Positions 16,069-53,700 are shown, counted from the first letter of the stretch. The stretch is 64,000 nt of DNA from Saccostrea cucullata (GCF_032062105.1 NW_026935164.1:62001-126000), one strand, 5' to 3'. Notes: generated from the sequence alone by a model not told the origin. Translations and numbers: made by a program.

Positions 16069-17060
16069 TTAAAAACACGAACTACCAGGCTTTTCATCTA
16101 GATTTTCTATCTGATAGACGCATTCTTTAGCCCTATCTGTATGATGCACCACAGTTTCAATTTTCGGTAAATTTTCACTGCTTGATTGCACATTTGGAGC
16201 AGGTTCCTCCGACATGTTTTGGGAATGCATACTGGTGGATTCCTTAGGGGAAATAGATTGTTCAGATCTTGATTTCTTCCCCTTTAGTTTATGCCGTGTT
16301 TCAGCTTGCAAAGGTACTGTTAAAAACTGAATCACTCCACCCTTGCCTTCTGACAGAGGCGAATCGCTACCTCCCGTTGACTGTGTCCTTTGCTTCTTTT
16401 CTCTCTTTACTTCTTTTGGTTTAAAGAACCTTGTTCCTAAAAAACTGGCGCGGCGTGGAAGATTGCCTGGTTCGATTTGACTCTGATCAGAATCACGGCG
16501 ATCTATAGAATTAAGGTTCGCACCCACACTCTCTGAACGTTTCCTATCCGTGAAGCCTGCAAATCCTACCCGTAATCCGAACAAATTAGAGCCGGATGGT
16601 AATTTCCGTAATTTATCCATTTTACCATTTGGCATTTCAAGAGAATCTTTATGTATACTTTCTCTAGATTTCGATTTTCGTTCTTCGGTAATTTTGTGTA
16701 GTTTTCCAGTAAAGTCAAACTTAAATTTCTTTTTTCTACGTGAACTTTTTGAACTTTCTGAACTATCATCTGAATCTTTATCCTCGTCTTCACTCGCACT
16801 TGTGACGACTGGGGTCGATTCCATTACTATTTCATTAACCAACTTTTGATCTTCCTCAAGGTCAGCTCTACTACTAACAATGCTTGGATTTTTGCCGATT
16901 TTGGTTAACCTTTCAGCGGCAACACTTTCCATAGTTCTGCGCATGAGGGGATATCTTTCCAATACTGTATTAAAATGTTCAACCGATAAAGAATAAAGAT
17001 TCACGTAGGTTTCTGCACGTACACTAGCAACCCTTTTGGCATTTGTTAGTAAGCATATTT
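16069..17060 (-). CDS. HCN: HCN terminal coding exon (CNBD end, long C-tail)
   Basis: [26 protein letters not shown]...KPGSSCF*. Confidence 0.95.
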
Positions 17061-27219: not shown

Positions 27220-30200
27220 GGCTGGTAAATACGTAGAGGTATTTTATCATGAAGCTACCATGCTTTCTTGAGCAACACAGCTCGATAGAGTTCAATTTTT
27301 GTAAGATAAAACTGTCAAAAGATTTCAATTTCGTGGAATTTCAAGATACAGCTATAGGAAGAAAGAAATCTTCATATGCCTCTTTTACATGAACATATGA
27401 TATTTAGATCTAAATATACCAATGGGAGTAAGTGTTATTTACTGAAAAATTGCTACCATAGAAAGGGAGCGCCAGCATCGATTTTTTTCAGCATCATAAA
27501 AAGTTTTAACTAGTACATGAGTGTATGGATTGTAAGCTGAGCTTTTTATTAGCTGTCTCTTAAGGACCTGTCAAAATGAAACATACATTAATAGACCGTC
27601 TCCTTACAAAAATAAATTGATAAATTTTGGTTGAAAAAGATTGGTGATGATGTGAAGTAAGAGATAATTGAACCTTTACTACGACTTTTATTCGGGTATT
27701 GTAGATAAAATTACACTGATTGACCAGGTCAATAAAAAATCTACAAAATTGAAGAAATAAAAAATATAAAATAAAAGCCGCCCGCCCGCCTCGATTTTAA
27801 AAAAAACTCGGATGAGAATCTAGCAATTTATTTATTATGGCCTAATTCTTCGGCTTTACACTCGTTTTGAAGGCTAATGCCACACATTCAAATATTTCTG
27901 TAGTGTTTTGAACTGTAGTGTAAGAAAGAAAGACAAACTCAAAAAGTTATTTTTTAGTTCCTTTGCATAAATTTTACACAGTCTAAAAGTTGGTTACTTT
28001 CAAAGGAGAAAAAAATTCACGGGGTTCATTTTCTCTCAAAAATTCTACTGTATGGGCTGAAATATGCAGACATTCTTTAAAAAATACTGTATTTGTACTT
28101 CATATGTTCCTTCCTCTCCTGTTTTAAATAATAATAAAATAAATGTCACATATTTTAAAAAAGAAAAATATATTGATTTTTGGCAGAAAGCGTATTTTCG
28201 AACAAATCATACATCTTCATTGATTTATGTTACATTAACAGTGTTTTTTTTTTTAACGAAAAATGTTGTTAATAAATTGCAATGAAAAATGAAATCAGGA
28301 AGCATATACGAATTGTTTATGTTAGACTTGTTATTATCATTATGTCGAACGAGACTTTCTTAAGGGTTCATATTTTTTTAAAGTTCGTTTTGTAACAAAC
28401 AAGAAGGTTAATTAAACTGTGTTACAGAATTAATTTGAAGATCTTCATTATAATGATTTTGTTTATACACCCACCATCTGTTGTAATTGTAAACAGCTCA
28501 GTCTTCTTTTAGAACAAGACTTAATAATGACATGATAAATCACTTCGTGAAACCAATATTTGATAAGAGAATCGATTTTTTTAAAGAAACATACTTAAAT
28601 ACAATGGGTCTGAAATCAATTTTGCAGAAGGTCTTATAGGAATAAATTACGTACCTGTTCGGAAATTTATTATAATATCCAAAAAGAAAACCGTGTCTGA
28701 TATACAATTGAATGCGATCCATTCAGCGGTGAGATCATTGTTGAAGAATGATATGGCTACTGGTAAGATTATAAGGTTTGCAAGTAGAAGCACCAGCATG
28801 AATAGATCCCAATAAAACCTGTTGAATATAAATAATCGTATTCAGAAAACAGTAAAAATTAGTAATTGCAATGTGCTTGGAATCATAGTTCAGAATGCAT
28901 TTTTTAAAAGGATATGAATGTGTACATAAGTAAAAGGTCAAGATAATGAACAATGATCAACTTTGAAAAAAATATAACTAATAGAAATTTGTGAAGAGAG
29001 CATAAAACATAAACCCCTGGAAGTTCCAAAGGTGGATTAAGGTGCTAAGAAAGAGCAAGGATACCCTTTTTGTCCGGTGATATGTACCAGCCGTGAACCT
29101 TTTGAATTGATATGATACATCGCGTAGTCAAATCTAACCTAACATTTAGTATGAAACAATTCAGCCAGAACCCCATGATAGGTTATGTTTATATATCAAG
29201 GCCATTATAACGACCATAGAATTAACGGAATGCTGACAATGAACGAGGTAGTTGATATCCCTGTAATATCAACTTATCAGTGAGTAGCATACCTCGCTTC
29301 AAAACTCGAACTTACTCAGAGCACGCTCTTGAGTAGCAAATAAGTTGGGAGGCATAAGCACCATAAGCTGGGGATGGTGGAATATTACTTTAAATAAGGA
29401 AAGTTGACAATAAAAATAGTGAAAAATGTTGAAGAAAACAGTGATCGATCTCATAAGAACATCAAACAACACAAATTAAGAAAGAGCTGTATTTATTTTG
29501 AATATTGGTAAGCCCCGTCTTTCCATTACAATACAAAAATTGTTTCCCTTTCTAGGTAACCTTATTCAAATGGTCAAGTAAGCTGATCAAAGTTTGTCTG
29601 TTTTTTAGTTAACCTTAAACATATCTCAACCAACTTCAACTAAATAAGACAATGCATATAAAGAAAGTTTCTCTAAATTAAAAATAAAAGGTCACATATC
29701 ATTCCAAAAGGATTTTAATCAAGAAAGAGCGAGATCATTTCAAATCCATCATAAGAATCATTAGAGCAGAGCAAATGAAACTTATGCGTAAGATTCTTTA
29801 TTACTCATATTCAATTAGACTCAGTAGGGTCTAGTCTACGGAATAAGATTTAACATCAGAATACAAGAAAAACATGGATACATAAGACCTGGGATATTCC
29901 TATTCCTGTCTATAAAAATCAAATTCTATGTGCACCAAAATTAACATAGTAAATTCATATAAAGGCAAGAAAATATAACAAGCAAAACTTTTTCGCATGA
30001 AATATTTTATATGGTAAATACAAATATGTGGTTTTCTCCGAGTTTGGACCCAAGCAACAGGATTCAGGGTGTCTTTTCTTCCCTAGAGACTAAAACATCA
30101 AATACTAAGCCATGCAATATATCAAAGGTAGTGGCATGAAATAAAAGTAGATAACGAGCAATATATGTAAGCATATATCCTCATCATCTGCATATGGGGT

Positions 30201-33200
30201 TTATATCTATTAATTGATTCGAAATGCAAGAGCTTGCTCTAAGTACAACACGTTTTAAAACGATGAAAGATAATGACAAACAAGTTGAAAAAACAAGAAT
30301 AAGATCAGTTTCGTATAAAGTCATCATTTCGCAAGTCCTATGGTCGATTATATGACCATATCAGCAAATACAATATACTAGTATGATGAAGTCAAATGCA
30401 GAAAGACGTTCAGTCATACAAATTGTAATGCCATTACATTATTTACACACGACTAATTTTTTTCCATTTTTGCCGATCATGTCAATGAGCACACGGCAGG
30501 TGTGACTGGTCGGCAGGGGATGCTCACTACTCCATGGCACCCGAACCAAACTATGATGTTTTAGATGTTTGCCCTGCTCCTGATTTACATTGGTGGAATG
30601 AACATGTGAGTTTGAGTACTGTTCGTTGTCTTCATATATGACACCACTAACAACTGTATCCCAAAGAGAGAAATAATGTCTTATTTTAAATAATTCAATG
30701 CATTTTCAATGACTTTATTTATCAAAGTCATTGAAAATGCTTTGAATTATACAAGAAATAAATAACTTCGATGGTCTAAACCTCAATCTCAGTCCCCAAG
30801 ATGCAGACAATTCTCTCAGACTTTTGTTCAGACTTGTCAGAAGAAAATTTAAACGATATACACGTCTAAGACTAATAAGCAAAAGAAAAAAAACGAGATT
30901 AATTTTGAATCAGCCTTTGAAATGTAATATCTATCCATTACACACCTTACATTTCCTCAATTTAATGCAATCTCGGTGATAAATTGTCAGATATTTATTC
31001 AAGGATTTTGATTTTACTCTCTTGGATTTTTAAATTATTAAAACCCACACTTTTAGTTATTTCATGAAATATGCGTTTGATCATCAAGGATGCATTCACA
31101 ATTTCTTAGTGTAGTTAAATTCATGTACGTAAAAGTTTATATTATACTGATGAAATTTGAAGTTATAAAAGATAAATGCTTTTCGCTTTTTTCTTTCTTT
31201 TTGCTGCTGTACCGGATAAGGATAAAACGGTTTAGCAATATACATGTCTGTTCATCGAAACAGAACTAACGTTAATTTTGTTCGTCCATATTATGTTCTC
31301 TTGACTTATACATTAATTTCGAAGCTACGTTTCTCATCAAATTGTACATGTCCTCTACACTTTCCCTTGATGACAAGGTACTATATAAGAATGGAACGGA
31401 TATCCCTGTAATCTTATAAAATTAATAAAGGGACAAGGAAATTAGGAAAATTCCAATTAAAACACCATTAGATTTCATTTCGCGGTAGACGCAACAGGAT
31501 ATCTGGTTCTGTGATTAATTCGCCCCTCTAATTTAATTTTCCTCCCTATCACTCGTTTATAATTTCGGTGACAGATTGAAAAACTAATGATTCCAACCAA
31601 ATATGTACGAAATATCCGGAAATCAAGCTCGACTCTTGATACATGTAGAAATCACGGTCAATATACACGACTTTAATATCGGATAAAACATTCAACTGCC
31701 GCTGATCACGTGATTAATTCTAGCCTGATCCGTCATATGGTAAGTATTCTTAGTATCATTCACAGTTCCTCTATGGTTGTACCCTTCACAAACATCCAAG
31801 TCATTGTGAGGTCCTCATACTCTATAAATCCGTCCGTACTAGATAGATTAGAATCTGTAAAGCTTATTGGGTGCAAAGAATTTTTGATCAGAAGAATCAT
31901 ACCTTCAACTCTTGTGATGCACACGGTCGTGGACCGTTGCAAAAACATGTAGCAAGAAAGCGGAATCTCGCGATTATTGATATCTTATACCATTCATTAA
32001 GGAGTTTCATACTGAATTATTCATGTTACAATGAAAGATCGATTTAATAAAATAGAAATTATGTCTAACTTGTAAATAAATTCCACATATATTTATCCAT
32101 CTGCAAAACATGGAATTTTGAACATCTTCTATATCTCACTTAAAAATGAAATATTTATTATTTTTTTCGATCAAGGTTCAACATCCATATGATTACTTAT
32201 TACAATTTTTTTCTGTATAACTTTTGATATTTTCATGGAATAATATAATTTATGAAAAAAAAAATTAAAACATTATTTCATAACACCTCGCTTGGTAAAA
32301 TTTGAGTAATATTGAAATGGTAATAATATTTCTCTAGTTTTTTTTAATTATATGCATTGCCAAGTTAAGTTTAATATTTTCAATCATGAGTCCTTTTGCC
32401 CATAGACTTATTGAGGAAATACACAGAAATTGATCCCCTGTTCCATATTTTGGGGGTACAGCGCTTGTCTTTTGAAAAATCTACGTAAATAAAAGACGCA
32501 ATCGAAGAATGTTCTGCACTTTCATGCAAGGGTTCATGGAACTCTATCATATGTGAAAACTAAAGCATGCCCGTAATGTTCAAATAAACATCGCTCTTTG
32601 AGATAACCCGGGTTCTGACGGGAATCATAAAACAATCGGCTGACACTTCGTCAGCAGGGGGAGATTTAAATTGTTTATACAATAAATAAAACTACTTTTT
32701 TTTGCTTTCCCCCTCTAATATAAAGTACAGCTAATTGTGATGGCATAGGTATTGATTATTTGGCCAATATGAAGGCTTTTCAGGAAATTGAACTAACTAG
32801 AATGCAATCAATGCATACTGGTGCTTTTTTTCCTTTGCTTCCTTTTTATTGAAAGGGGTACTTTTGGTATATTTCAATAACTGTCAGTTATAAACTGTTT
32901 ATGCATTTGCTTCATTAAAAAACCTCAAGTACGAAATTGTAAAAATGTGTTTAAGTGAAATGAAATATATAATGATAACGAACAGTACTCAACCTCAAAA
33001 GTCCACCAAACAATGTAAATAACGACTAAAGTAAACATGGACCTCCAAAACATCAGAAGTTGGATCAGGTGTCATATGCAGGGAGGAGTAAACATCCCCT
33101 GCCGACCGAGCACACACGCCGTATGCTAATTGACATGATCGGTAAAAACAAAACAAAAATCCTTCTTTCTCCTCTCTTCTCTCTCTCTCTCTCTCTCCCT

Positions 33201-36200
33201 CTCACACACATAAGAAATTTACAGAAAATGTAATTATATATTGTAAAACTATGTATTAGAATCTGTAAATAAAAAAATAGAAGGCAATTTAGTGAGTAAA
33301 TAATGGTTCAACGATAGTGCAAAGAACGTCATTCAGTATTTGACTTAATGATATATTGTATTTGCTGAGGTATGTATTGTATCGACCATGGAACTTACAA
33401 AATGACCACTTTAAACGAGACTGCTGGAATTTTAGTTTGATCTACTTGTTTGCCAATAGCACCTAGTTTTTGAAACGTTGTGTGCAGGTGTTAAGGGTAT
33501 ACTGCTGCATAAGGGAAATGGACGAATGAAAAGTTAAAGACATCGTTTATCAAACTTCGTTGTTAGATTACCGGTACCATTAACGTCTTTTTCTCGTAAA
33601 ATATCTAAATATGATACAGATGTGTCAGACTCTGTGTTATCTTTTATTTTAAGCTCACTGAGATATATTGAGTCCACATAGGAATAGAAATAACTATTGT
33701 TAATTGACAATATATCGTTGATATATATCTAAATGTTGATTTGAATGTCACAGCAAGTTTCACGTAAAGGATTTTGAACAAATTTTGCTTCATACGACAT
33801 AAATTACAAAAATATGCTTTTAACGGGGCGCAATAGGTACACACGGGGATTCCAACAGGTTGTTGAAAGACCTCAACCCAGGCTCATGAAACAGGTGTAG
33901 ACATAAGTCAAATTTTGATCGCCTGTAAAATGCATATTAAATACAAAATTAATCTCTTTTTTTTTTTTAAAGAACAGCACTTTTGTGAATCAATATTGAA
34001 ACTTATTTTTAATTTTTGATCCGCTTAACTTCACTGATAGAAAAACCTAGTTGAATAGTGTACCTAGTAAAGCGTTCTTCATGATTAGTAATCACTCTGT
34101 TTACTAGCTAAGATAGTGGAAAGTGGAGTAGTGGTCGTAAAGATACTTAGATACCTAGTGAATGTTACTTATAAACTCTAGATTTACTAGTGTTGTGTAG
34201 TAAAAATACCCAATACCTAGTAAAACTACTTTTGAGGTAGTGATTGTATGGACAGTAAATTTACTAGTCTTCTTAGTGACTTTCACTTGTTATTTTTTTT
34301 CAGTGTTCCACAACATTTTAGTACATGGATATTTTGACTCAAGTTTAAAATGCTTCATGATCTTTGTACCTGGTCTCCAAAAACCAGATAAATTTTGTCA
34401 ATCAGAAACTCGAGCATCTTCTTAATATCAACTTCAGAGTACTTGTGTGTACAAGTGTGTGAAAGGAGTTAAAGTGACTACAAATAAAGGACTGCATCCC
34501 TTAGCAAAGCCATCTTTTTTTTTTAACTTGATATATAGCTAACTTCTTCACAAAACATTCTTTTCTGACAAATATACATAGATACATGTGTTTATAACGT
34601 CAATGTAGATTATAAAACACATTTTTCAAATCGTATTAAACTAAAGAAGACCAGAGCAATGCTCTATTCACTGCTGCCTTATGTCTTGTTTAAACTGATT
34701 CTAACTTACACTTTGAATTGATCAAGGGAGATAATGTGTTTTGATTTTAAATGACAATGCCATTAATAGGTATGTTATAAATTAGTAGAGATTACAGGGT
34801 TTCTTTGTTTCTGTCCGTCCTTCTGTCTATTTGTACGTTGTTCTGTCTGTCTCTGTGTCAGTCTGTCCCGCAGCTTTTTTCTTAACGTTTGTAGATCTTT
34901 AGGGCGTTCAGATTTTAGAACGCAGTTCGCAGTTCGCTATTCGCAATTCAAAAGTGAATTGCGTTCTAGAACGCAGTTCGCAATTCAAAATTTAAACATA
35001 AGCTGTGTGGTCTGAAATTTTGGGGGTGGGGTACTAGGGGCCAGATATCACTTCTATGAAAAAATGGTGATGGTACCATCTCTAGTTTCCGAGATATGGT
35101 CCTCTAGTTTTTAGCCCTACTATATAATACTAAACGAATAAACATCGGGCTCGGGGACATCGAAGTCCCCTACCCTGGGGTCTGAAATTTTGGGGTTAGG
35201 GTACTAGGGGCCAGATATCACTTCTATGAAAAAATGGTGATGGTAACCATCTCTAGTGTCCGAGATATGGTCCTCTAGTTTTTAGCCCTACTATATAATA
35301 TTAAACGAATAAACATCGGGCTCGGGGACATCGAAGTCCCCTACCCTGGGGTCTGAAATTTTGGGGGTGGGGTACTAGGGGCCAGATATCACTTCTATGA
35401 AAAAATGGTGATGGTACCACCTCTAGTTTCCGAGATATGGTCCTCTAGTTTTTAGCCCTACTATATAATACTAAACGAATAAACATCGGGCTCGGGGACA
35501 TCGAAGTCCCCTACCCTGGGGTCTGAAATTTTGGGGGTGGGGTACTAGGGGCCAGATATCACTTCTATGAAAAAATGGTGATGGTACCATTTCTAGTGTC
35601 CGAGATATGGTCCTCTAGTTTTTAGCCCTACTATATAATATTAAACGAATAAACATCGGGCTCGGGGACATCGAAGTCCCCTACCCTGGGGTCTGAAATT
35701 TTGGGGGTGGGGTACTAGGGGCCAGATATCACTTCTATGAAAAAATGGTGATGGTACCATCTCTAGTGTCCGAGATATGGTCCTCTAGTTTTTAGCCCTA
35801 CTATATAATATGAAACGAATAAACATCGGGCTCGGGGACATCGAAGTCCCCTACCCTGGGGTCTGAAATTTTGGGGGTGGGGTACTAGGGGCCAGATATT
35901 ACTTCTATGAAAAAATGGTGATGGTACCACCTCTAGTTTCCGAGATATGGTCCTCTAGTTTTTAGCCCTACTATATAATACTAAACGAATAAACATCGGG
36001 TTCGGGGACATCGAAGTCCCCTACCCTGGGGTCTGAAATTTTGGGGGTGGGGTACTAGGGGCCAGATATCACTTCTATGAAAAAATGGTGATGGTACCAT
36101 CTCTAGTTTCCGAGATATGGTCCTCTAGTTTTTAGCCCTACTATATAATATTAAACGAATAAACATCGGGCTCGGGGACATCGAAGTCCCCTACCCTGGG

Positions 36201-39200
36201 GTCTGAAATTTTGGAGGTGGGGTACTAGGGGCCAGATATCACTTCTATGAAAAAATGGTGATGGTACCACCTCTAGTTTCCGAGATATGGTCCTCTAGTT
36301 TTTAGCCCTACTATATAATACTAAACGAATAAACATCGGGCTCGGGGACATCGAAGTCCCCTACCCTGGGGTCTGAAATTTTGGGGGTGGGGTACTAGGG
36401 GCCAGATATCACTTCTATGAAAAAATGGTGATGGTACCATCTCTTGTTTCCGAGATATGCACCTCTAGTTTTTAGCCCTACTATATAATACTAAACGAAT
36501 AAACATCGGGCTCGGGGACATCGAAGTCCCCTACCCTGGGGTCTGAAATTTTTGAGGTGGGGTACTAGGGGCCAGATACCACTTCTATGAAAAAATGGTG
36601 ATGGTACCATCTCTTGTTTCCGAGATATGCACCTCTAGTTTTTAGCCCTACTATATAATACTAAACGAATAAACATCGGGCTCGGGGACATCGAGGTCCC
36701 CTACCCTGGGGTCTGAAATTTTGAGGGTGGGGTTCTAGGGGCCAGATACCACTTCTATGAAAAAATGGTGATGGTACCATCTCTTGTTTCCGAGATATGC
36801 ACCTCTAGTTTTTAGCCCTACTATATAATACTAAACGAATAAACATCGGGCTCGGGGACATCGAAGTCCCCTACCCTGGGGTCTGAAATTTTGGGGGTGG
36901 GGTACTAGGGGCCAGATATCACTTCTATGAAAAAATGGTGATGGTACCACCTCTAGTTTCCGAGATATGGTCCTCTAGTTTTTAGCCCTACTATATAATA
37001 CTAAACGAATAAACATCGGGCTCGGGGACATCGAAGTCCCCTACCCTGGGGTCTGAAATTTTGGGGGTGGGGTACTAGGGGCCAGATATCACTTCTATGA
37101 AAAAATGGTGATGGTACCACCTCTAGTTTCCGAGATATGGTCCTCTAGTTTTTAGCCCTACTATATAATACTAAACGAATAAACATCGGGCTCGGGGATA
37201 TCGAAGTCCCCTACCCTGGGATCTGAAATTTTGGGGGTGGGGTACTAGGGGCCAGATATCACTTCTATGAAAAAATGGTGATGGTACCATCTCTAGTTTC
37301 CGAGATATGGTCCTCTAGTTTTTAGCCCTACTATATAATATTAAACGAATAAACATCGGGCTCGGGGACATCGAAGTCCCCTACCCTGGGGTCTGAAATT
37401 TTGGGGGTGGGGTACTAGGGGCCAGATATCACTTCTATGAAAAAATGGTGATGGTACCATCTCTTGTTTCCGAGATATGCACCTCTAGTTTTTAGCCCTA
37501 CTATATAATACTAAACGAATAAACATCGGGCTCGGGGACATCGAAGTCCCCTACCCTGGGGTCTGAAATTTTGGGGGTGGGGTACTAGGGGCCAGATACC
37601 ACTTCTATGAAAAAATGGTGATGGTACCATCTCTTGTTTCCGAGATATGCACCTCTAGTTTTTAGCCCTACTATATAATACTAAACGAATAAACATCGGG
37701 CTCGGGGACATCGAGGTCCCCTACCCTGGGGTCTGAAATTTTGAGGGTGGGGTTCTAGGGGCCAGATACCACTTCTATGAAAAAATGGTGATGGTACCAT
37801 CTCTTGTTTCCGAGATATGCACCTCTAGTTTTTAGCCCTACTATATAATACTAAACGAATAAACATCGGGCTCGGGGACATCGAGGTCCCCTACCCTGGG
37901 GTCTGAAATTTTGGGGGTGGGGTACTAGGGGCCAGATATCACTTCTATGAAAAAATGGTGATGGTACCATCTCTTGTTTCCGAGATATGCACCTCTAGTT
38001 TTTAGCCCTACTATATAATACTAAACGAATAAACATCGGGCTCGGGGACATCGAAGTCCCCTACCCTGGGGTCTGAAATTTTGGGGGTGGGGTACTAGGG
38101 GCCAGATATCACTTCTATGAAAAAATGGTGATGGTACCACCTCTAGTTTCCGAGATATGGTGCTCTAGTTTTTAGCCCTACTGTATAATACTAAACGAAT
38201 AAACATCGGGCTCGGGGACATCGAAGTCCCCTACCCTGGGGTCTGAAATTTTGGGGGTGGGGTATTAGGGGCCAGATATCACTTCTATGAAAAAATGGTG
38301 ATGGTACCATCTCTAGTGTCCGAGATATGGTCCTCTAGTTTTTAGCCCTACTATATAATATTAAACGAATAAACATCGGGCTCGGGGACATCGAAGTCCC
38401 CTACCCTGGGGTCTGAAATTTTGGGGGTGGGGTACTAGGGGCCAGATATCACTTCTATGAAAAAATAGTGATGGTACCATCTCTAGTTTTTAGCCCTACT
38501 ATATAATATTAAACGAATAAACATCGGGCTCGGGGAGATATGGTCCTCTAGTTTTTAGCCCTACTATATAATACTAAACGAATAAACATCGGGCTCGGGG
38601 ACATCGAAGTCCCCAACCCTGGGATCTGAAATTTTGGGGGTGGGGTACTAGGGGCCAGATACCACGTCTATGAAAAAATGGTGATGGTACCATCTCTAGT
38701 TTCCGAGATATGGACCTCTAGTTTTTAGCCCTACTATATAATACTATACGAATAAACATCGGGCTCGGGGACATCGAAGTCCCCTACCCTGGGGTCTGAA
38801 ATTTTGGGGGTGGGGTACTAGGGGCCAGATATCACTTCTATGAAAAAATGGTGATGGTACCACCTCTAGTTTCCGAGATATGGTCCTCTAGTTTTTAGCC
38901 CTACTATATAATACTAAACGAATAAACATCGGGCTCGGGGACATCGAAGTCCCCTACCCTGGGGTCTGAAATTTTGGGGGTGGGGTACTAGGGGCCAGAT
39001 ATCACTTCTATGAAAAAATGGTGATGGTACCACCTCTAGTTTCCGAGATATGGTCCTCTAGTTTTTAGCCCTACTATATAATACTAAACGAATAAACATC
39101 GGGCTCGGGGACATCGAAGTCCCCTACCCTGGGGTCTGAAATTTTGGGGGTGGGGTACTAGGGGCCAGATATCACTTCTATGAAAAAATGGTGATGGTAC

Positions 39201-42200
39201 CATCTCTAGTGTCCGAGATATGGTCCTCTAGTTTTTAGCCCTACTATATAATATTAAACGAATAAACATCGGGCTCGGGGACATCGAAGTCCCCTACCCT
39301 GGGGTCTGAAATTTTGGGGGTGGGGTACTAGGGGCCAGATATCACTTCTATGAAAAAATGGTGATGGTACCACCTCTAGTTTCCGAGATATGGTCCTCTA
39401 GTTTTTAGCCCTACTATATAATACTAAACGAATAAACATCGGGCTCGGGGACATCGAAGTCCCCTACACTGGGGTCTGAAATTTTGGGGGTGGGGTACTA
39501 GGGGCCAGATATCACTTCTATGAAAAAATGGTGATGGTACCACCTCTAGTTTCCGAGATATGGTGCTCTAGTTTTTAGCCCTACTGTATAATACTAAACG
39601 AATAAACATCGGGCTCGGGGACATCGAAGTCCCCTACCCTGGGGTCTGAAATTTTGGGGGTGGGGTATTAGGGGCCAGATATCACTTCTATGAAAAAATG
39701 GTGATGGTACCATCTCTAGTGTCCGAGATATGGTCCTCTAGTTTTTAGCCCTACTATATAATGTTAAACGAATAAACATCGGGCTCGGGGACATCGAAGT
39801 CCCCTACCCTGGGGTCTGAAATTTTGGGGGTGGGGTACTAGGGGCCAGATATCACTTCTATGAAAAAATGGTGATGGTACCACCTCTAGTTTCCGAGATA
39901 TGGTCCTCTAGTTTTTAGCCCTACTATATAATATTAAACGAATAAACATCGGGCTCGGGGACATCGAAGTCCCCTACCCTGGGGTCTGATATTTTGGAGG
40001 TGGGGTACTAGGGGCCAGATATCACTTCTATGAAAAAATGGTGATGGTACCACCTCTAGTTTCCGAGATATGGTCCTCTAGTTTTTAGCCCTACTATATA
40101 ATACTAAACGAATAAACATCGGGCTCGATATGTGGAATACATATTCTTCATTTCTATAAATAGCAGGCAAACCCTTTCTTGTCATTCGTCTCTTAGGGGA
40201 AAACCCCCTGGATTTTATACGAAACTATGTTTAGCTTACATATGTAATGCCTGTAAATAATTAATCGCATTATCTGTGTATTTACATCAGAAATTGGAAA
40301 AAAAAAAATTCGAGTTTATTTCCCGATTATTTTGATTTTTTTATTTCTATTTCAATAAATATAATATTAATCACTTCTGAAATTTCATTTCAACTTTAGT
40401 CATTTCGGAATTATATTTTTTTTTTACAAAAATATGTCAACTAAAATATAACAACTAAAAAACAGATTACATGTACATGTGTGTAATTTAGTAATTGGGG
40501 TTTTGGGGGTTTACCATTTTAATAAGAAACCAGCAATCAAAAAAAGGGGGGAGAGTTACAGAGGAAGAATTTAAAAATAATTAAAATGGAAGAGGATATC
40601 CAATATTTAGAGGATATCTATGGAAAGTTGTAAATATTTCATTATCAACTTTTGTTTGATATTACAGCAGAACTCGGTTATAACGAAGTCACATGGGCCT
40701 ATGAAATTATTTCGCTATATCCATAATTCGTTATAACCGTATAAGAAAGTCATTAAATTCATATGGATGGGGATCCAAGATGACTTCGCTATATCCGTAA
40801 ATTCGCTATATCCGTGTTCGTACTAGACGAGTTTTGCTGTATACTGATATTGCCCTTTCATGATGTTTATCCATAAATATAGTTGTGTATATAGACTTCA
40901 CAGAAATGCAAAATACTCTTTTTTGTGGAGTCGATATATCTATGGATTGATTGTATGAAAGGACTACCCGGTACGTTTGTTAACTTCTTACCTAAGAAAA
41001 ATAATTTGTATAAGCCATAAGTTTTCTCTTTCATCTTTTTATCCCCCTAAAGAAAGTTTTGAGGTGTATATACGAATTAACTTGTCCGTCTAGCTGCCTG
41101 TCCGTCTGTATATAGCTGTCTGGTTGCATGCGCAAACGGGTCCGGTCCACATATATCTTTTGATGAAACTTAAGAATTTACTTCTCCCTACAAAAATTGC
41201 TCATGACCTAAGGATGTGCCATGACCTTAACCTACGGTCATTTTGTCAAGTTCAAGGTCACTGGAAGAAACTTTTTCATAAATCGTGTCCGGCCCATATC
41301 TTAGGATACACTTAGTGAGTTCCCATTTTACACTAAGATTGCTTATGACCTGAGGGAGGTTGTGCCATGACTTGGCTTAAGTACATTTGTGCAAATTCAA
41401 GTTCAACTTTAAGAAAATGTTCATAATTATCTTTCCTATGCAAAAAACCTGAATTTTCCGCTTTACACAAAGATTGCTTATGACTTGACGGTGTGTCATG
41501 ACCTTGATTCAAATTATTTTGTGCAAGTTCAATGTGACTAAAAGAAAAAGTGCATAATTTGTGGTCTAGTCCATATCCAACTTATGGATAAATTTGGTGG
41601 GTTTTTTCTTTTATACAAAGATTGCAAATGCCTTGAGGGTTTGACTTGATCTTTATTCAATGTTTTTTGTGCACGTTCAATGTCCTAGGAAGAAAATAGA
41701 AATATGTCCATAGGACATAAATGCCCCGCCGAAGGTATACCGGGGTATTAGTAAGGCAACATGAAAATTTGCATGAAATTTGTTCAGAATATCTTGAAAA
41801 GTGATGCAGTTGAATTACTTACATCAGTATGTATCAGCATATGAAGTTTCAGAAAAGTGGGGTCAAGGTCAAATGAAAGGTCATGGTCAAAAACTTGTGA
41901 TACAGTTGAACAGCTCTCATCCGTATGTATCAGCATATAAAGTTTCAAAAACATTATGAATGGTTTCTTTAAAATTGACATGAACACAATTTGATAAAAA
42001 TGAGGTCCAGGTCAAATGAAATGTCAAAGTCAAAATGTTGATGTAGTGAAATGCTTACATCAGTATGTATCTGCATATTAAGTTTGACACTAATTTTGGA
42101 AAAGTGAGGTCAAAGGAAAAGTCAAGGTCAAAATTGTTGATGCAGTTGAATAGTTCTCATCAGTATATGAAATTTGATAAAATATCTTGGATGGTTTCTT

Positions 42201-45200
42201 TAAAACTGAGTTTAACACTAATATAAGAAAAGTGTGGTCAAAGTTCAAAGGAAAGGTCAAGGTTAAAAATGTTGATGCGTTGAATAGCTTTTATTAGTAT
42301 GTATCAGTATATGAAGTTTGATAAAAATTCTTGGATGGTTTTTTTTTATACTTAGCTAAACACTAATTTAAGAAAAGTGTGGTAAAGGTCAAGGAATGGT
42401 CAAGATGAAAAAGTTTGATGCAGTTGCATAGCTCTCATCAGTATGTATCAACATGTGAAGTTTGATAAAACCACGTTGAATGGTATGTTTAAAACTAACA
42501 AAACACTCATTTAAGAAAAGTGAGGTCAAGGTCAAAGGAAAGGACAAGGTCTAAAATGTTGATACAATTGAAAAGCTCCGATCATTAGGTATCAGTACAT
42601 GAAGTTTGAAAAAAAAAATCTTGGATGGTTTCTTTAAAACTGAGCTAAACACCAATTTAAGACAAGCTAATTCAGAGAATTCAGAGAATTTGTGTCCCCC
42701 GCTTAGGGAAAAGTAAACAATGCGCAGTTCGGGGGGGGGGGGGGGTCGGATCCCCTTGACTGAATTTGTAGAATTATTAAATGTATACATGTATACTGAA
42801 GCAAATAAAATATGCCAATATGGATATAAATATTTGATTGCTTATTCTTTATTATGTATATAGAAGATTCTTTTTATATGGAATATTTATCACACTGTAA
42901 TGATGATTTTATGAGTTTGTACAAGCCAGACCTCATAAATTTTCATTTCACATGCTGAATACTATCATTTAGTTTGAAAAAAGTATTTCGAAAAAAAAAT
43001 AAATTGGATCGTTCGGGTTGCGAACCCGGGCCATCTCACATGTGAAGCGAGAGACATACCACTAGACCACGGAACTGCGTTATAGTGACACAAATGATAT
43101 GCAGAGATGAAGTCACATACATGTACATGTATATATTCACGTTCGATATTGTCATCATTTTACACAATGAATGGTGTCTAATTTAACCTGTGTTAATCAG
43201 TTCTAATTAAGGAATGACTCTAATTCTTGGCCAAATTATTCGATATAACCTGGTTTGGGTCAGTTTACGGCTTCGCAGATTATAAAAGAAGCGTAAACTG
43301 ACCTCTACCAGGTTATACTCGAATAATTTGGCCAAGAATTAGAGTCATTCCTTATAATTTAATTTTAAAATAATTTAACAATGTGGATGTAAAATTGTGC
43401 TGCTTTTCATGAGTTCAAATTTGCCGCTCAATAATACATCCTTAGAACGGAAGTGGTGGGGAACAAGGGGAGGTAATAACTGATACACAGATGTAGCAGC
43501 CATAATGTTTGTTTACATGAGGTAAGATCGAGCTACTGTCTGACGTTAAAGGTATATTTATTAAATCTGGAATTTTCCATGAATCCCAAGGCCATGAAAT
43601 GAGGGGATTGCATGGATACATATGATTCAGCTGGTTGTCAAGGGGGTGTGTCCCCATACCAAACCAGATTATTGAAAAATAATATGCATTCCTTTTTGGA
43701 AATCAACCAAAGAGAGAATAGAATACAAACAAAATTAAATTATTAGATGTAATAAGAATATAAAGTCCACCGAGAACCTGTTTTATACGTGATAACTCTC
43801 CTCATGCCCCAATGCTAAAAATAGCGACATGTAATACAATAAATACTAATAAAACAAACGGGACGGGACACTTTGAGAGGGGTAAGAGAGGTCCTAAGGA
43901 GTTTTTGTATAAAATTACATTGCAAAAGCTCAAAATTTTTTTGAAATATCGCCCGGAAGGGATAGTGTTTCATACAGGAAGAATGAATAAATTTACGACC
44001 TTGAACTTTGACCTTTTGACCTCAAAATCAATAGGGGTCTTCCTTAGGCCACAGGGGGTTGTTATGTAAAATTTCATTGCAAAAGCTCAAAGGGTTCTCG
44101 AGATATCGCGCGGAAACGAAAGTGTTATAACAGACAAAATTTGCGAATTTATGACCTTGACCTTGACCTTTGACCTCAAAATCAATAGGGTTCTTCTTTA
44201 GTTCATAGGGAGTTGCTATGCAAAATTTCATTGCGAAAGCTCAAAGGGTTCTCGAGATATCATGTGGAAACGAAAGCGTTACAGACAGACAGAAAGACGG
44301 ACGGACGGACGGAGGACAGACCCAAATTAATATTCCCCACTTTTCAAACGGGGGACAAAAACGACAACAATGCTTATTTTTTTCAGCAATTTCAAAGTGC
44401 TTTACAACTGAAACATTGTATTTTTACTTATATATATGTTTCTTTTTGTACATGAAAAGATTTCAGATACATTTACTGTATACAAGGTTATTTTCGCCCC
44501 GTCTTATTTTCGCCTTTCACACTTGCAAACAATTTTGCCCCGTTTAAATTCGCCCAGTCATAGTTTTGTGTAAGAAATTGTACTGCATTCTTTGATTTCG
44601 CCCCGTTTTAAATTCGCCCAAATGAGGATAGTGCGAAAGGGGCGAAAATAATACGGGGGCGAAAATTTCCCTGTATACAGTATTCATATCGAAGACTATT
44701 TCAGAATATAATGATGTTCTTTAACCCAGTTTCGGTGAAAAATATCGCCTATCCTCTTAATTTCAAGAGATCAAGATTTCATGATTTACTTTTTAGCACT
44801 GGTATTAAATAAATGATCAATTATCATTGAATTGTTCTTTGTATTTAATAAATATTTTATGTCATCAATATTGAATTAAATGGTTTTAAAATGTAAGCAG
44901 GAATCAAGAGTTAGCGTGCGTAGTTCTTTTATTCCGTGGTATAGGAGGAGTTGTGGATAAGAGATGGGTACTCTTTAATATTATAGAAAAATGACACTGT
45001 CATTGTTTTGCCTCGGAAAACCAAAAATATGTGTCAAAACAAAAAGTAAAATAGGAGGCCACAATGGCAATATATAACAAAAATTCTGTGGAAGTCTCAT
45101 TAAATATCATTTAGTGGTAAAAAAAAAAGAGGTGCGGAGAAGAAATAAGTACCCCAAAGCGTAACAGACGGACGTACAGACAGACGGACATCCCGATTAC

Positions 45201-48200
45201 TACATACCCCCCCCCCACCCCCGCTTTTCAAGTGGGGTATAATAATACGTTGTTTACTTTAATTGAGTTTCCATTTTTACTCAACTGAGTTGAAAGCTCG
45301 AATGAGCTTTCCTGATAACCGTTGTCCGTCGTCTGTCTGTCCGTCTGCAAACTTTTCACATATTCGACTTCTTCTGAAGAACCACTGGACCAATTTTAGC
45401 CAAACTTGGTAGAGAGCATCCTTGTTTAAAGGGAACTTTAAATTATTGAAATAAAGGGCCAGGTCCCCTTGCAAGTGGGGATGATCACGAAAAGGCAAGA
45501 ATAGGGTTCTGGAGACTCTAACCGAAGGTCAGAATAGTGGATAGAATTTGCATTGATTGTTTAAATCATTACCCTTGGTGGTAGGGGTTGGATAACGAAA
45601 ACAAAAGAAGGGGTAAGGAACAGCATGGTTAAAATAACTCAGGTGTGTCATATGGAACTTGTACCCAACCCTCAAAATATAAGACCCCGGGGTAGGGGAC
45701 TTCGATGTCCCCCAGCCATATCTCGGAAACTAGAGACGGTACCATTACCATTTTTTCATAGAAGTGGTAACTGACCCGTAGTACCCCACCCACAAAATTT
45801 CAGACCCCGGGGTAGGGGACTTCGATGTCTCCCAACCCGATGTTTATTCGTATAGTATTATATAGTAGGGCTAAAAACTGGAGGGCCATATCTCGGAAAC
45901 TAGAGATGGTACCGTCACCATTTTTTTTCACAGAAGTGGTAACTGGCCCCTAGTACCCTACCCACAAAATTTCAGACCCCGGGGTAGGGGACTTCGATGT
46001 CCCCCAACCCGATGTTTATTCGTATAGTATTATATAGTAGGGATAAAAACTGGAGGGCCGTATTTCGGAAACTAGAGATGGTACCATCACCATTTTTTCA
46101 CGGAAGTGGTAACTGGCCCCTAGTACCCTACCCACAAAATTTCAGACCCTGGGGTAGGGGACTTCGATGTCTCCCACCCCGATGTTTAGTCGTATAGTAT
46201 TATATAGGAAGGCTAAAAACTGGAGGGCCATATCGGAAACTAGGGATAATACTATCATCATTTTTATAGAAGTGGTATCTGACCCCTAGTACCCTACCCA
46301 CAAAATTTCAGACCCCGGGGTAGGGGACTTCGATGTCCCCCAACCCGATGTTTATTCGTATAGTATTATATAGTAGGGCTAAAAACTGGAGGGACATATC
46401 TCGGAAACTAGAGATGGTACCATCACCATTTTTTCACGGAAGTGGTAACTAACCCCTAGTACCCCACCCACAAAATTTCAGACCCCGGGGTAGGGGATTT
46501 CGATGTCCCCCAACCCGATGTTTATTCGTATAGTATTATATAGTAGGGATAAAAACTGGAGGGCCATATTTCGGAAACTAGAGATGGTACCATCACCATT
46601 TTTTCACGGAAGTGGTAACTAACCCCTAGTACCCCACCCACAAAATTTCAGACCACATAGCTTATGTTTAAATTTTGAATTGCGAACTGCGTTCTAGAAC
46701 GCAATTCACTTTTGAATTGCGAATAGCGAACTGCGAACTGCGTTCTAAAATCTGAACGCCGATCTTTAGCTGATATTTTAGAATTTGACCTACCTTGATG
46801 AGTTTTAGATCAAGTTTGCATTTTTTTCCGCTTCAATGTTCTTTTAAAGAATAATGGCATTTTTAATTTTTAACGGGGACCAGTTAAAACTTGCTAGTAC
46901 AATTCTCTCAGAATGATTGTTTTGTTTATTATTGTTCAACGTCCTTCTCGACAATTTTTTACTCATATGGAGACGCCAACATTTGCCGGAGGAGGACTGC
47001 AAATATATACTTATATGTTTACCCGTGTAATCAGGGTCATTGAGCAGTGGGGGATCTTTTTCGTGTCAACACTTACTGTACCTCGGTTTATACTGAATTG
47101 ATTTTGTCTTCTCCAAAGGAACAAGTAAATAGTTTGTACTGATTGAGAGAACCGTATATACTTTATGGGCTTATATCTGTTATAGGAAACATTTCGTGGT
47201 TGTACACATCACATTCCTAGCATATCTTTGGCTTCTAGCATAAAAGTTAAATGCGCTTTTTTTCTTTTTTAAATTTTTGCAAATTTGCTTTATTCGTTTA
47301 ATATCCAGCCAACAAATCATATCAAACGCATTCCATTTCTCTTCCTTTATAAATGGTTCACTTATTAGACTTCTAGTTAATAAAAACTCATCTTCAAACG
47401 TTAGAAAAACAGCTTTCATTAAGTCATTATTCAAGTTTACAAATGCACAAAAACACTGTAAACATTTAGCATATACATTTATACATGTTACAGCGATATG
47501 CAGGATCTGAATCCCTAAAATCCTCCTGAAAGCGTTATTTAATTCTTGCCATTTTACCTAAAATGTCGTAAATTTCATTATCAGAAACTTGACCTTCAGG
47601 CATACTGACTTTTGACGTCATTAAATGATATAAATGCTTAGTTTTTTTTTTAAGAAAGGGTTTCATAAATTTTATTATAGATGTAATTTTAAATTTATGC
47701 ACTATCTAAAACGCAGAATTTACTCTTGAAAAAGATATCTGATAACAGGTCGCTTTGAAGTATAACACCAAAAAAAAAAAACGTGATTTTTGTGAATTCA
47801 TGAAGTAGAGGTTTTCATTTATCCTTTCATGGACATTTTTCTTTATTCTAAATGGCAAAAACTGCAGGGATCGGAAACAAAATGATGAGACAAAGCGAAG
47901 AAATTGTTATGAGCAACAGATCTTCCTACGTTCTGTCTGAGACACAATATTATGTATTAATTATATGTTCGTTTAAATCATTTTTTTTTCTACCGTCATC
48001 CTTCTTTAATATTAAAGAAACAATCGCTTTGGTCTGAAATATGTCACTCAGATTGTAATTGCCAAACAAACCTTTATAACGACTATAAAACTGCTGAAAC
48101 AAGTGCAGCATTAGTTGTCTATCCACTCGTACATGTACGTCGGATACAATTCTCTGAGATCGATAAATTATCAAGTTAATGTACAATCCTAATCAAAACA

Positions 48201-50669
48201 GCAAGTTTTTTAAAAATATTATTTCTTGATACTGCCAAGTCAGCGAGAAAAAGAAGACAAGCATATCTTAAATGGAACATCAACCTCTCTGCTTGATCAA
48301 TCTAGAATAGCCGCAACGAGTTGATCATAATTTTGGTTAAATGTTATTTATTCAGTTCACCCTACCATCTATAAAAACATCAATAACATACACAACTACT
48401 ATATATCCCCAGCTTCATCTGTGATTCTTATCTTGATATGAAATATTCCTAGCGCACAAAAATATTTTCAATATCTATTTTCAACTATAATTGCACATTG
48501 AAGTGAAAAAAATCTCAGAATGCATAAAAATAAAATAATGCATCGCTGGTGAAATAAAGGGGGACAGAGCAACTAATTTACTCTAAGAGGTAGGTAAATG
48601 TATTTTTAGTGATAGACATTTCATGGAAAAGGAGCGCTAGCGAATTCCGATCAATAAACAATCTTAGGTAATGAGGGTACTGATGATGGAGTAAACATAG
48701 AATATCACAAGTAAGAATTGAACATAAGCTATTCAGCTTATTACTTGGAGGTTTTCACAGACACATTGAATCTGTCTTTGCTTTATTCTTAAAGAATGAT
48801 AGGGATTGAAAACAGAAAAAAATTACTTCAAGTTTTCAATCGACTTCTGTTTTTTCGATCAGGTTTTCTTTATGGGTTTGTAGATTATAGTCCGGTTATA
48901 CTGATCGTAGTTTGTACCCTTATCAAGAAGAAAACCTAAATAAATCTCTTGTCGCTAAAATAAGGGCAATTTCTCATCGCAAACGCATTCTGATTTTCTC
49001 AATATCTTGTATCTTCTGAAACATTATTTCTGCTTTGGACAGCTTGATGGATTTGGTCAGAAGGGATAGGAATCATTCATCAGCCTTCTCCGCAACTCAC
49101 CTCTTGGTCATTTCTTGGAATCAACCATTATTGCTTTGCAAGGGACGATTCTCGCCAATAATGGTTATCTAAGGAAAAGCTTGGACCATACCGATAATGC
49201 ATCTTAATTTTAGCAATTTAACATCGTCTTCTATACTCGAGTAAATGCACAACCCGGGTGATTGCCGGAGATTGAGATGGTCCATTTGGTTTAAGAGGAC
49301 GAACCGCCGTTCCAACAGCTCTCCAGATGTATAGAAGGATATAATATCGAAATAAGAACATTCGGAAATTGATTTCTGACATATGAGGCTGATTTTTTTA
49401 TATCATGTTGGATTTGTACGAACAATTAGACTTTTCAATGTTTTGACAGACTCAAGCTTAAATAACTTTTAAATTCATTTATTTGTCAAATGTATGAGTG
49501 CAAAGAACTGTTTTTTTTTAAGTTTGATGTCAGATGAGTAAAAATTACAAGTATTTTTTTCCAACCAAACTGCGAACAATTAATGCACATTATTCTGCAA
49601 AAAAGCAAAGAACGAACTTGATAAAATTTGCAAATTTTATACAGTTTTTTATTTTCAAGTTTTAATTTATTTTCTATTTCGTTGTATTTAATTGCATCCC
49701 TTTTTTGCAGAACACTCAAGGTAACATCTTTCTCGACCAGGATACCAGTAACTGAGCAAGGACTTTGATTGGAATACTAGCTGGTGGACTGTTGTATGGT
49801 GTGGTTCATATTCACATGTGCATGTACTTAATGGGTTTGAAGGCTTTATACTTGTATATTGATTTGTCTATGACATAATACAACGATTACTAATGTCCAT
49901 TTTGAAAAAAAAATTAATGAATTGCTACCCAATACAGATGCAAACGAATGATATAAAGTTTGCACTTATAACTTTTTAATATCTTCAGGATTTTTTCTTT
50001 CTCTAAATTAAGTCTCTCTCCTCTTAAACGAAAATCAACAATAATGTCAAGATTGCTTTTAAATAAGTTTTTGCACGATTTTCTTTGGATTTGAGTATAT
50101 TTTCTAATTGCTTTTCACATATCATTTCAAGCCATTGGCCTATTTTAACAGAGTACCTTTTTGAAACTGAACCCAAGTTTTTAAAATTAAATTTTAATAG
50201 AAACTATTGCCCTGTCACAGAAAAAAGAAAATACATGTTTATTGGATTTGAGAAACTCTCTTTATGATCATCAGAAGATACTAAGAGATCTTACATGTAA
50301 TTTTGTATACCTGAAATGGATATTAATATATCATTCACAACACCATTTCATGAATAAAAATGCAACAGATTTCAGATGGGACACATATGGAAAGCAAAGG
50401 CAGGAGCACTGATTTTTTTTAAATTTCGGTTTCATGAGAACTGTCCTTACGAAACATCCTAAAATACCACAGCTTGCTAATACACGTTAAAAGTTAAAAA
50501 AAAAAATATGTAGAAGACACTCTAGCTTAAAGTACTCAATTCCAAAACACACACAGGTAGCTCATATCATGCCTCTTTGCATTCAAGCCTTAATACCATA
50601 ATTATATTGATTGTTTGTATTTTGTTTTCGTCCCTTTCGAGAAAACTTGAATCTACATTATGTAAAACT

Positions 50670-50719
<50 letters not shown>

Positions 50720-53700
50720 TACTAATACATGTATTAATTCCCATTCGCGAATTTTTTCACTAACATAGAGACGACACCATATACCGGTCGAAAGCTTTAA
50801 ATTTTAGAGCTTTACTCTGCACTAAGAGCCAGTGAGAAGTGGGGGTTCTTTATCGTACTAACGCCGATCGTGACTCTCATACGGAGGAGGTGATCAGAAA
50901 GTAGTTGGACAAACGTGACAATCCCCTGCCTGTGGCTAAAGATCTATATATCCAAAGTATTAGAATATTTCTCATCAACAGTAAAGGGATTTATGGGCAA
51001 ACACATTTTCAAACTAAGCTTAAACGGAATAGTGTAGGAAAAAAGAATCTGTATTATCCTCGTAAAATATAACATATAATTTACAGTAAAAAAAAATGTA
51101 CTTTGTATAATTCCTAGTTTATTAAGTGATATTTTGCATTTTCGACGTGATTGTACAGTGTTCCGATTTGTTCTTGCAAAGCCGTCACTTGTACTTTGGT
51201 AATAATTCTGTTCACGTGCAATTATCAGTTTGTAACGAATAATTGCGCTAAAACGAATCGTTATTTACACAGATTTTCATCGCACAAATGACATCCAAAA
51301 CCATTCCAAATAAATTCTTAAAATATTTAATGATATTGTTGTATGTATTCCTCTTATTGCAAATCTTTTATGAATTTCATTGATAATTGCACAATGTACT
51401 TTATATGTATTATTATTTGCAAATGTATGTCCATCGTTCCAAGACTTTCTCATAGTGGTTTGTCTCGCAAAAGAGGCGTTATATTCACAGACGTTTTGCA
51501 TCCAAGAATTTAAATGCTCGTAAAATTTCCTCCGAGACCGTTGAAGTAAGATAAATACAGAAGCCACGTGCCTTATAATTTGTCTGCATTGTGTATATTT
51601 TGTGGAAGTGATAAGGAATAAAACATTTCTTACACAGAGACAGGGATGCGCAATGTGTACATTTCTCCGCGATGAAATAAACCACCTGGTAGCGTCAAAT
51701 GCGTTCCGGTAAAATTATAGATGGTAGCTAAGCCTTTTCTTTTCAAAACATTTCTCACATTTTACAACTGGTTTCCCAAGCGGTTCGAAGCCGAACTTTC
51801 TTGCCCTCTGCAGCCCAATAAATTGCATTTCACAGCCTATAAAGTATTTCATCCTCAGTTGTTGGAGTTTCCTTTACTTCCTGCTTTATAAAAACTGCAT
51901 ATGTCGGAAATTTCAAAATAAGACCATCAATACCTGCCACTGTAATTTTTTCGTATCATCAATTTTTGTTCATTTTTACATTATGCCCGTGGAATATTTA
52001 CAATTATAGATGTCACTGATGTACAGAAAGTCGATTCTTTTAATCTCATTAAGCATTAAGAACGTACGCCGCAAAAAATCTACCAGTGACATTTGTATAA
52101 AAAAAAAGATTCCACAATCCTTCATAATGATATCCATTGAAGTTTTTCGATCGTGTTTTAAAAGGATCATGATTAAAGCTTACGTTATTGATACATATTG
52201 TGTATCGTTAACATGGGTGAATGGCGGAAAAAATATTTTATTCTTGAATTTTGTTGTATATGTTAAAAGATTTTTTTTTTTTTTTGGAAAATGGAAGTAA
52301 ATGGTATTCCTTCATCAGTGTAAAGATACCTAGAGAAACCTAAAGGTACATACAAGAAAACATTGATGTAACCATCAATTGTCGCCCGGGAAATAAATAG
52401 AGTAAACAATGGAAATGAGTCTTGATCATCAAACCGCTTCGATATGTGTGAAAAAGATATGCGTCTAAATGATGGAGACGATAGTCGAGAATATTTTGAA
52501 AACTTATAGTCGGAAGAAAATCGAAAACAAACAATACCAATTTAAACTTATCAATTCCTCAAGTAAATGTTGGCTGCATAAAATATAAATCGAAACCAGA
52601 CATATATATCACCTGTATTCAAAAATGTATTTCACTTTAAGAATATAAAACACGAACTGTCTACAGTACGTTTTTATGCGATAAGTAAAATTCGATGTTC
52701 TAAAAAAAGGGAACTGTCGTTTTTCGATAGTAAATTATAAGCAACTTTATATATTAAATATAAAAACATATATATTTTTACAGATTCACTTTATGGAAGT
52801 AAATATATCATGTATCTCGTAATTTATAAAGAGAAAGAACATTCTGATTACCAATCTTTTTAATGTTTAGAAAACCTTTAATTCTGAATAACTTCTCCCA
52901 CCTCAATCCCCATATACCAAAACTTAAACTTATATGTATAGAGCAGCCCGGTTCTCCGGGCTGCAATAAGACATTCCGAGATCACGATATTTGGTGTTAA
53001 AGTTATATTTTAGGATTTCAGATAATGATAATTCAAACGTAATTTTAAATCATTTAGCGAGAAAAACATGCAATGCTCAGCAGAAAATCAGATTTCTGAT
53101 TCGACATAACATATTGAATCATAGTCTTTGCCTTAAAGCATTTTATTGTTTCCATAGGTCCTTGTTTACTTAGCTGACAATTATACATATAATTTTACAG
53201 TTTAACTGGACTTTTGAGCTTGATGGTGTAGGCTATCCTCAACACTTCATTTTCTTTTTAAAAAAAACAACTCTTTACTGAGAACATTACACATGCCGTA
53301 TTGCAGATAATTTGAAGTATCTTCTACTAACATGTATTTAATTCTACCGCTACGACAATATGATACTCACAGCTCATAGTTTATAAACTACGATAATGTT
53401 ATATGCAACAGACCATTAAGTTTTGGTTAGTTATATCGTCAAAGATAGAAAATAAAATATTTTTGGCAAGAATCTTGGCAGCATTTTCATCCATCTACAT
53501 TATAATAATCAATTTAACTCTTCAAGTAGTAGATTAAATACAGGAGATACACGAAAGATGACGTGATTTACTTACATAAAAATACTCAGAAGTACTACTA
53601 TATGCTGTATATTGAGAATTCTCATACATAATTACAGCTACCTTTCCATGCTATTTTTATTCTTGTCTTCGGACCTTTATCTGACTTTTTTCACAATTTC

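What the first reader, a model, noticed from the sequence alone, without database searches (positions are those of the whole stretch)
34894..46769. 11.9-kb foldback transposon whose arms are inverted 170-bp satellite arrays
Seen: a perfect 9-bp TSD (gatctttag), 102-bp identical inverted termini, then 170-bp tandem repeats running inward on both arms in opposite orientation (about 30 vs about 6 copies). These surround a 5.5-kb core with no transposase ORF. Known: modular tandem-repeat TIRs with 9-bp TSDs characterise Foldback and Phantom-type Mutator elements. Inference: a repeat finder would call two unrelated satellite blocks, but this is a single mobile unit that disperses and amplifies a satellite. 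The intact TSD and identical ends suggest a recent insertion. As I recall, bivalve satellite-TE links are mostly described for Helentron-type elements, so a TIR-borne satellite may be an undescribed family.
Basis: partly seen in the sequence, partly recalled or inferred. Interest (0 to 1): 0.85.

Follow-up and report, generated by a model that had tools for sequence, protein, structure and literature searches.

The report
Oyster foldback transposon with satellite arms
This is a real jumping-DNA family in an oyster-like genome, with dozens of copies whose two ends carry opposed runs of a 170-base repeat; the design is already known from flies and beetles, so it is a new example, not a new kind.

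Summary
Observation confirmed: 9-bp target-site duplication, 102-bp identical termini, about 30 and 5.5 opposed 170-bp units, 5.56-kb core without a transposase. It is one copy of a family: at least 150 termini, 50 inward-facing pairs 0.9-28 kb apart (some are haplotig duplicates). Seven other complete copies have different 9-bp duplications (five perfect) and share a ~3.8-kb non-coding core. It sits in an intron of an HCN channel gene. Best reading: a non-autonomous foldback cut-and-paste element, most likely moved in trans by a Mutator/Rehavkus-type transposase, which I did not find. Tetris (Drosophila) and Rehavkus (Tribolium) already show this design, so it is a new member of a known kind. 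Added detail: left and right arms carry distinct monomer subtypes inherited across copies, yet three copies have both arms homogenised, pointing to arm-to-arm conversion. 'Recent insertion' is unproven (no empty site; core at least 9% from all sampled copies). Kinship of the monomer to Helentron-borne Cg170 is only suggestive. The scan noted other satellite-armed foldbacks in this genome (unchecked).

The parts
34894..34902 (+). Left copy of the 9-bp target-site duplication
   Evidence: other copies carry other 9-mers
34903..35004 (+). Left outer terminal inverted repeat, 102 bp, starts GG; contains four TTCGC motifs and internal palindromes (likely transposase-binding part, inferred)
   Evidence: at least 150 such termini in the genome
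35009..40127 (+). Left arm: about 30 units of the 170-bp repeat, L subtype, with one broken unit near 38411-38535 and recurring variant blocks
40128..42666 (.). Family core, left part: ~500 bp shared end, a ~200-bp insertion (40625-40839) absent from other copies, then Helentron/HINE-like relics with ~140-146-bp internal units
   Evidence: HINE likeness is from recalled anatomy, not tested
42667..44357 (.). 1.7-kb segment shared only with copy C15537; includes 154-bp repeats at 43911-44291
44358..45684 (.). Family core, right part: a ~190-bp palindromic insertion (about 44474-44683) and a Helentron-like relic with Cg170-like units ending just before the right arm
45685..46654 (-). Right arm: about 5.5 units of the 170-bp repeat, R subtype, about 8% from the left consensus
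46659..46760 (-). Right outer terminal inverted repeat, identical to the left over 102 bp
46761..46769 (+). Right copy of the 9-bp target-site duplication
28825..55537 (-). Host context: ~26.7-kb intron of an HCN channel gene (between the exon ending IHPCSNFR and the exon starting FYWDL); boundaries approximate

Best explanation
A non-autonomous foldback DNA transposon. A transposase made elsewhere binds the 102-bp outer termini, cuts the whole 6-15 kb unit out and inserts it with a 9-bp staggered cut (shown: repeated insertions with different 9-bp duplications; inferred: cut-and-paste in trans, most likely a Mutator-superfamily enzyme of the Rehavkus/FB-NOF or Phantom kind). The two arrays ride along as part of the arms, each keeping its own subtype from the progenitor (shown). 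After insertion each array grows or shrinks on its own by unequal exchange or slippage (shown: 2-43 units per arm, variant blocks repeated; mechanism inferred), and now and then one arm overwrites the other (shown in three copies; conversion in the folded-back form inferred). The core is junk cargo: relics of other elements plus later nested insertions.
For: Seven further complete copies with own 9-bp TSDs, five perfect and two with 1-2 mismatches. At least 150 termini, 50 inward-facing pairs counted by hand. Shared collinear core at 82-96% identity. All 39 hits of a right-junction 27-mer and about 1,530 monomer hits are consistent with element-borne arrays. L and R consensus monomers form two clusters across copies; five diagnostic sites; C4953, C15537, C18547 have one type on both arms. 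MULE TSD 8-11 bp, Rehavkus 9 bp (PMC6446971); Rehavkus termini with up to 50 repeats and over 11 kb (PMC12581902); the genome has many MULE transposase ORFs.
Against: No MULE, IS1595/Merlin or PF20700 hit lies inside any listed pair of termini; those lists are capped and Rehavkus transposases may not match these profiles. No empty site seen. The monomer does not contain the short motifs of the outer terminus, so a binding role for the array is not shown.
Confidence: 0.68

Rival explanations
1. Same foldback unit, but mobilised by a Merlin (IS1595-type) transposase.
For: Termini start GG and TSD is 9 bp, both Merlin traits, and Merlin elements often hold tandem repeats (PMC8101967). The genome has 93 Merlin-like hits; two lie on contigs that carry a copy (C11436, C23636, probably one locus).
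Against: In those two contigs the family core is of normal size (junctions 12884-17437 and 44945-49512), so the Merlin hit is 11 kb beyond the right junction; roughly a 20% chance that some copy has such a neighbour. Kilobase satellite arms on both ends are not a described Merlin trait in the paper read.
Confidence: 0.17
2. Mobilised by another long-TSD enzyme (P/Galileo-like or an unclassified DDE transposase); the foldback form is convergent.
For: Foldback structure arises in unrelated superfamilies (PMC3169594, PMC3573991); no partner was found among the three profiles tried.
Against: From established knowledge, P/Galileo make 7-8 bp duplications and start CA; here 9 bp and GG in all held copies. 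P-type profiles were not searched.
Confidence: 0.12
3. Not one mobile unit: two short elements or satellite blocks landed near each other, or an assembly artefact.
For: About 50 termini have no listed partner on their contig; array length at this one locus is not checked by reads.
Against: Matching 9-bp duplications outside both ends in eight copies, a shared core between the arms, haplotig pairs with the same structure, and monomers with distinct variants rather than collapsed copies.
Confidence: 0.03

Closest known systems
Rehavkus (Mutator-related foldback group), Tribolium copies carrying TfSat/TCsat arrays (PMC12581902; PMC6446971)
   Same: Outer TIR plus variable subterminal tandem arrays on both ends, up to tens of units and many kb; 9-bp TSD; disperses a satellite-like repeat
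   Different: No transposase or PHD finger found here; Rehavkus is reported from arthropods and annelids, not molluscs; no sequence comparison possible
Tetris, Drosophila virilis (PMC4079207)
   Same: Flanking domain, tandem ~220-bp outer domain, non-coding middle, 8-10 bp TSD, unequal repeat numbers, within-element homogenisation, no known transposase
   Different: Here the flanking domain is 102 bp, arrays inside elements are far longer, copies are dozens not three, and no large free-standing array of the monomer was seen
Tm1/Phantom and Muta1 foldback MULEs (PMC3169594, PMC5499845)
   Same: Composite TIRs, 9-bp TSD, repeats inside the termini
   Different: Their repeats are 12-15 bp binding motifs; the 170-bp unit here lacks the terminal motifs; no FLYWCH-MULE gene found
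Galileo (P superfamily; PMC3573991)
   Same: Long TIRs with ~210-bp internal repeats that expand independently; conversion and TIR extension
   Different: TSD length and terminal bases differ (from established knowledge); Galileo has a P-type transposase
Oyster Helentron/HINE elements with Cg170/HindIII arrays (PMC8268682, PMC11136912)
   Same: Oyster mobile element that scatters short arrays of a 160-180 bp repeat; HINE-like relics lie in this core
   Different: HINEs carry one central array and move by rolling circle; this element has two opposed terminal arrays, TIRs and 9-bp TSDs

Membership tests
Foldback elements (structural class) | Long modular inverted termini with an outer domain and internal tandem repeats | tested here: met
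Foldback elements (structural class) | Dispersed copies with different TSDs and unequal arm lengths | tested here: met
Mutator/MULE incl. Rehavkus, Phantom | 8-11 bp (Rehavkus 9 bp) TSD | tested here: met
   9 bp in eight copies; PMC6446971
Mutator/MULE incl. Rehavkus, Phantom | TIR longer than 100 bp | tested here: met
   102-bp outer TIR plus kb arrays; PMC5499845
Mutator/MULE incl. Rehavkus, Phantom | Autonomous member with MULE-type DDE transposase | tested here: inconclusive
   no PF10551 or PF20700 hit inside listed pairs; lists capped; no ORF over 120 aa in held cores except a nested element
Rehavkus | PHD finger and sequence kinship to Repbase Rehavkus | not testable with these tools
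   no Repbase/Dfam, no query protein from a tool
Merlin | 5'-GG termini and 8-9 bp TSD | tested here: met
   PMC8101967
Merlin | DDE_Tnp_IS1595 transposase within the termini | tested here: inconclusive
   no hit inside a pair; nearest lies 11 kb outside the core of one locus
Helentron/HINE | Single central array, no long TIR pair, no 9-bp TSD | tested here: not met
   two opposed terminal arrays, TIRs and 9-bp TSDs
Cg170/HindIII satellite | Monomer homologous to CgiSat01 | tested here: inconclusive
   six collinear anchors by eye; profile and shuffle tests against 11 local Cg170-like units weak, z -1.3 to 3.0, HMM scores below 1 bit
Classical satellite DNA | Long free-standing arrays independent of the element | tested here: inconclusive
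   about 1,530 monomer hits, 0.02% of the assembly, about 10 per terminus; first 100 hits lie on contigs that mostly carry termini or core; long arrays may be unassembled

The most novel reading that the evidence does not exclude
The 170-bp arm repeat is a diverged Cg170/Helentron central repeat that was captured next to one terminus, copied to the other arm, and so changed vehicle from rolling-circle to cut-and-paste; the two arms then kept polar subtypes through many rounds of transposition, with occasional arm-to-arm overwriting. That would be a satellite switching between transposon classes, caught in dozens of dated copies.
Probability: 0.25. Interest if true: 0.6.

Novelty: new member of a known kind. 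Interest (0 to 1): 0.38.

Why it matters
Oyster satellite dispersal is credited mostly to Helentrons. This family shows a second route, a TIR element that moves 1-7 kb arrays in pairs and drops them into genes (here nearly half of an HCN intron). Because each copy holds two arrays of known subtype between dated ends, the family is a ready natural experiment on array growth, homogenisation and arm-to-arm conversion. Long inverted arms are also candidates for inversions and assembly breaks. The design itself is known from insects.

Tried and rejected
Merlin hit near copies on C11436/C23636 as the partner gene: rejected, it lies 11 kb outside a normal-sized core. The 564-aa ORF inside copy C13650/C19564 as the partner: rejected, it lies in a nested element with its own 66-70 bp inverted ends, has no Pfam match, and two homologues sit in elements with CAGTG ends and an apparent 4-bp duplication. 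Terminus variant seen in run X6 as a satellite-free autonomous end: it matches termini of known satellite-bearing copies. Terminus patterns in metagenome and viral contigs: none. Rfam: none. Monomer against the rest of the window: no similarity above shuffles. CgiSat01-12, 15, 28, 39, 46 of C. gigas by eye: none is this monomer; the other entries were not read. Reads of related organisms gave no contig across the insertion site. A computed alignment to the published CgiSat01 monomer was left out because it has no reference and would have had to be typed.

Full report
Observation. GATCTTTAG lies at 34894-34902 and 46761-46769, directly outside termini that are identical for 102 bp. Inward of each terminus runs a 170-bp repeat: about 30 units on the left (35009-40127, 97% matches, one broken unit near 38411-38535) and 5.5 units on the opposite strand on the right. 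The 5.56-kb core has no ORF over 109 aa, no Pfam and no Rfam match. The window has no N.

It is a family. A 27-mer of the terminus has 123 hits with at most one mismatch and none in the reversed control. A sequence model finds at least 150 termini, the cap of the search. From I counted by hand 50 inward-facing pairs on one contig, 0.86 to 27.8 kb apart, mostly 6-15 kb; at least six pairs of these look like haplotig duplicates, so about 40 loci have both ends. Of nine held copies with both ends, this one and five others have perfect 9-bp duplications, all different; two have one or two mismatches; one has a damaged end. Chance for one 9/9 match is about 1e-5. The copies share a collinear core of about 3.8 kb at 82-96% identity, with different nested insertions.

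The arms. Arm length varies from 2 to 43 units among held copies; positions on C14544 imply an arm region of about 11.7 kb. Oriented by the core, left arms share one monomer subtype and right arms another, 5-9% apart, with five diagnostic sites. Three copies break the rule: C4953 has the left type with a private change on both arms, C15537 has one intermediate type on both, C18547 has right-like units on both. The simplest reading is conversion of one arm by the other, as proposed for Galileo (PMC3573991); this is inference. Variant blocks recur along the left array here, as expected from unequal exchange. A conserved 22-mer of the monomer has 1,532 hits, about 0.02% of the assembly and about ten per terminus; the first hundred lie on contigs that mostly also carry termini or core. 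No long free-standing array was seen, though such arrays are often unassembled. The monomer lacks the short motifs repeated in the outer terminus, so unlike Muta1 repeats (PMC5499845) it is not an obvious multiplied binding site; passenger is as likely.

Partner transposase. The genome holds many MULE, Merlin and PF20700 hits, none inside a listed pair. The one near neighbour, a Merlin hit, lies 11 kb beyond a normal core. A 564-aa ORF in copy C13650/C19564 belongs to a nested element. Superfamily therefore rests on TSD and ends: 9 bp and long TIRs fit Mutator, Rehavkus above all (PMC6446971, PMC12581902); GG ends and 8-9 bp also fit Merlin (PMC8101967). I put Mutator-type at about 0.7.

Age. 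Not shown to be recent. The core here is at least 9% from every sampled copy, whereas four other copies form a closer clade at 92-98%. Copy C4953 also has identical ends and a perfect duplication, yet is shared by two haplotigs 2% apart, and conversion can keep ends identical. Contigs from runs of two coded organisms hold the terminus and monomers about 85-90% alike, so the family is older than this genome's lineage; none spans the insertion site, so no empty allele was seen.

Host and context. The element lies in the ~26.7-kb intron after the first coding exon of an HCN channel gene on the minus strand. Units nearly matching CgiSat01 of C. gigas are nested in neighbouring loci, which points to an oyster; the species is not given.

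Origin of the repeat. By eye the monomer shares six collinear anchors with CgiSat01b (166 bp), and the right arm has the same orientation as a Cg170-like relic at the core's right end, though not in phase. Computed tests against 11 local Cg170-like units were weak. This stays a lead.

Comparison. Tetris has the same plan (outer domain, ~220-bp tandem domain, non-coding middle, 8-10 bp TSD; PMC4079207). Tribolium Rehavkus elements carry up to 50 repeats and termini over 11 kb (PMC12581902). Oyster satellitome papers stress Helitrons but also list MuDR-related satellites, CgiSat23 and CgiSat28 (PMC8268682, PMC11136912); CgiSat28 is not this monomer by eye. I found no description of a satellite-armed foldback in bivalves in the papers searched, but could not check Repbase or Dfam. 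Unchecked notes of this scan list other foldbacks with 36- and 47-bp satellite arms in the same genome, so the design may be common here.

Verdict. Real, well supported, a new member of a known kind. Interest 0.38. The arm polarity with occasional conversion and the possible Cg170 origin are what could raise it. 

Noticed in passing
G000 C1015, C1243, C2127, C3289, C5388, C5696, C5894 (period ~1452 bp); C1748 (period ~4026 bp): A one-base variant of a 28-mer from the core's left end (window ~40212) occurs in long tandem arrays, 12 units on C3289; 260 hits in all. Exact monomer hits were absent from those contigs among the first 100 listed. A larger tandem repeat shares sequence with the core; source or derivative unknown.
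   Followed up: partly
run X6, window 34903-34993: One 166-nt contig matches 91 nt of the terminus at 100% in a run that holds none of the flanking high-copy repeats; could be a distant host (horizontal transfer) or a trace. Its next letters match a terminus variant of known copies.
   Followed up: partly
L039 3816-5959 (-), L040 about 2060-7276: 5.2-kb nested element with own 66-70 bp inverted ends and a transposase-like ORF in two pieces (564 and 135 aa), no Pfam match, with hundreds of unnamed homologues in marine invertebrates; two homologues sit in elements with 28-bp CAGTG ends.
   Followed up: partly
G000 C1354 about 132400-136950: Monomer hits alternate at 1172 and 512 bp, suggesting a ~1.68-kb higher-order unit inside an arm.
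   Followed up: no
window 16069-56473 (-): HCN channel gene; exons located by motif at about 55538, 28820, 26500, 23020, 20770, 20030, 19075, 17640, 17030.
   Followed up: partly
G000 C4853, C8789, C11481, C796, C10732: PF20700 hits with ~686-745 aa open frames recur at ~4.1-kb spacing, i.e. tandem arrays of a whole transposase-bearing element.
   Followed up: no
L035 from about 834: Copy C20375 breaks off after about 1.3 monomers into unrelated sequence: a truncated end.
   Followed up: no
G000 C16869 21922-28390: Two left-junction motifs facing away from each other 6.4 kb apart with no listed terminus: a rearranged copy.
   Followed up: no
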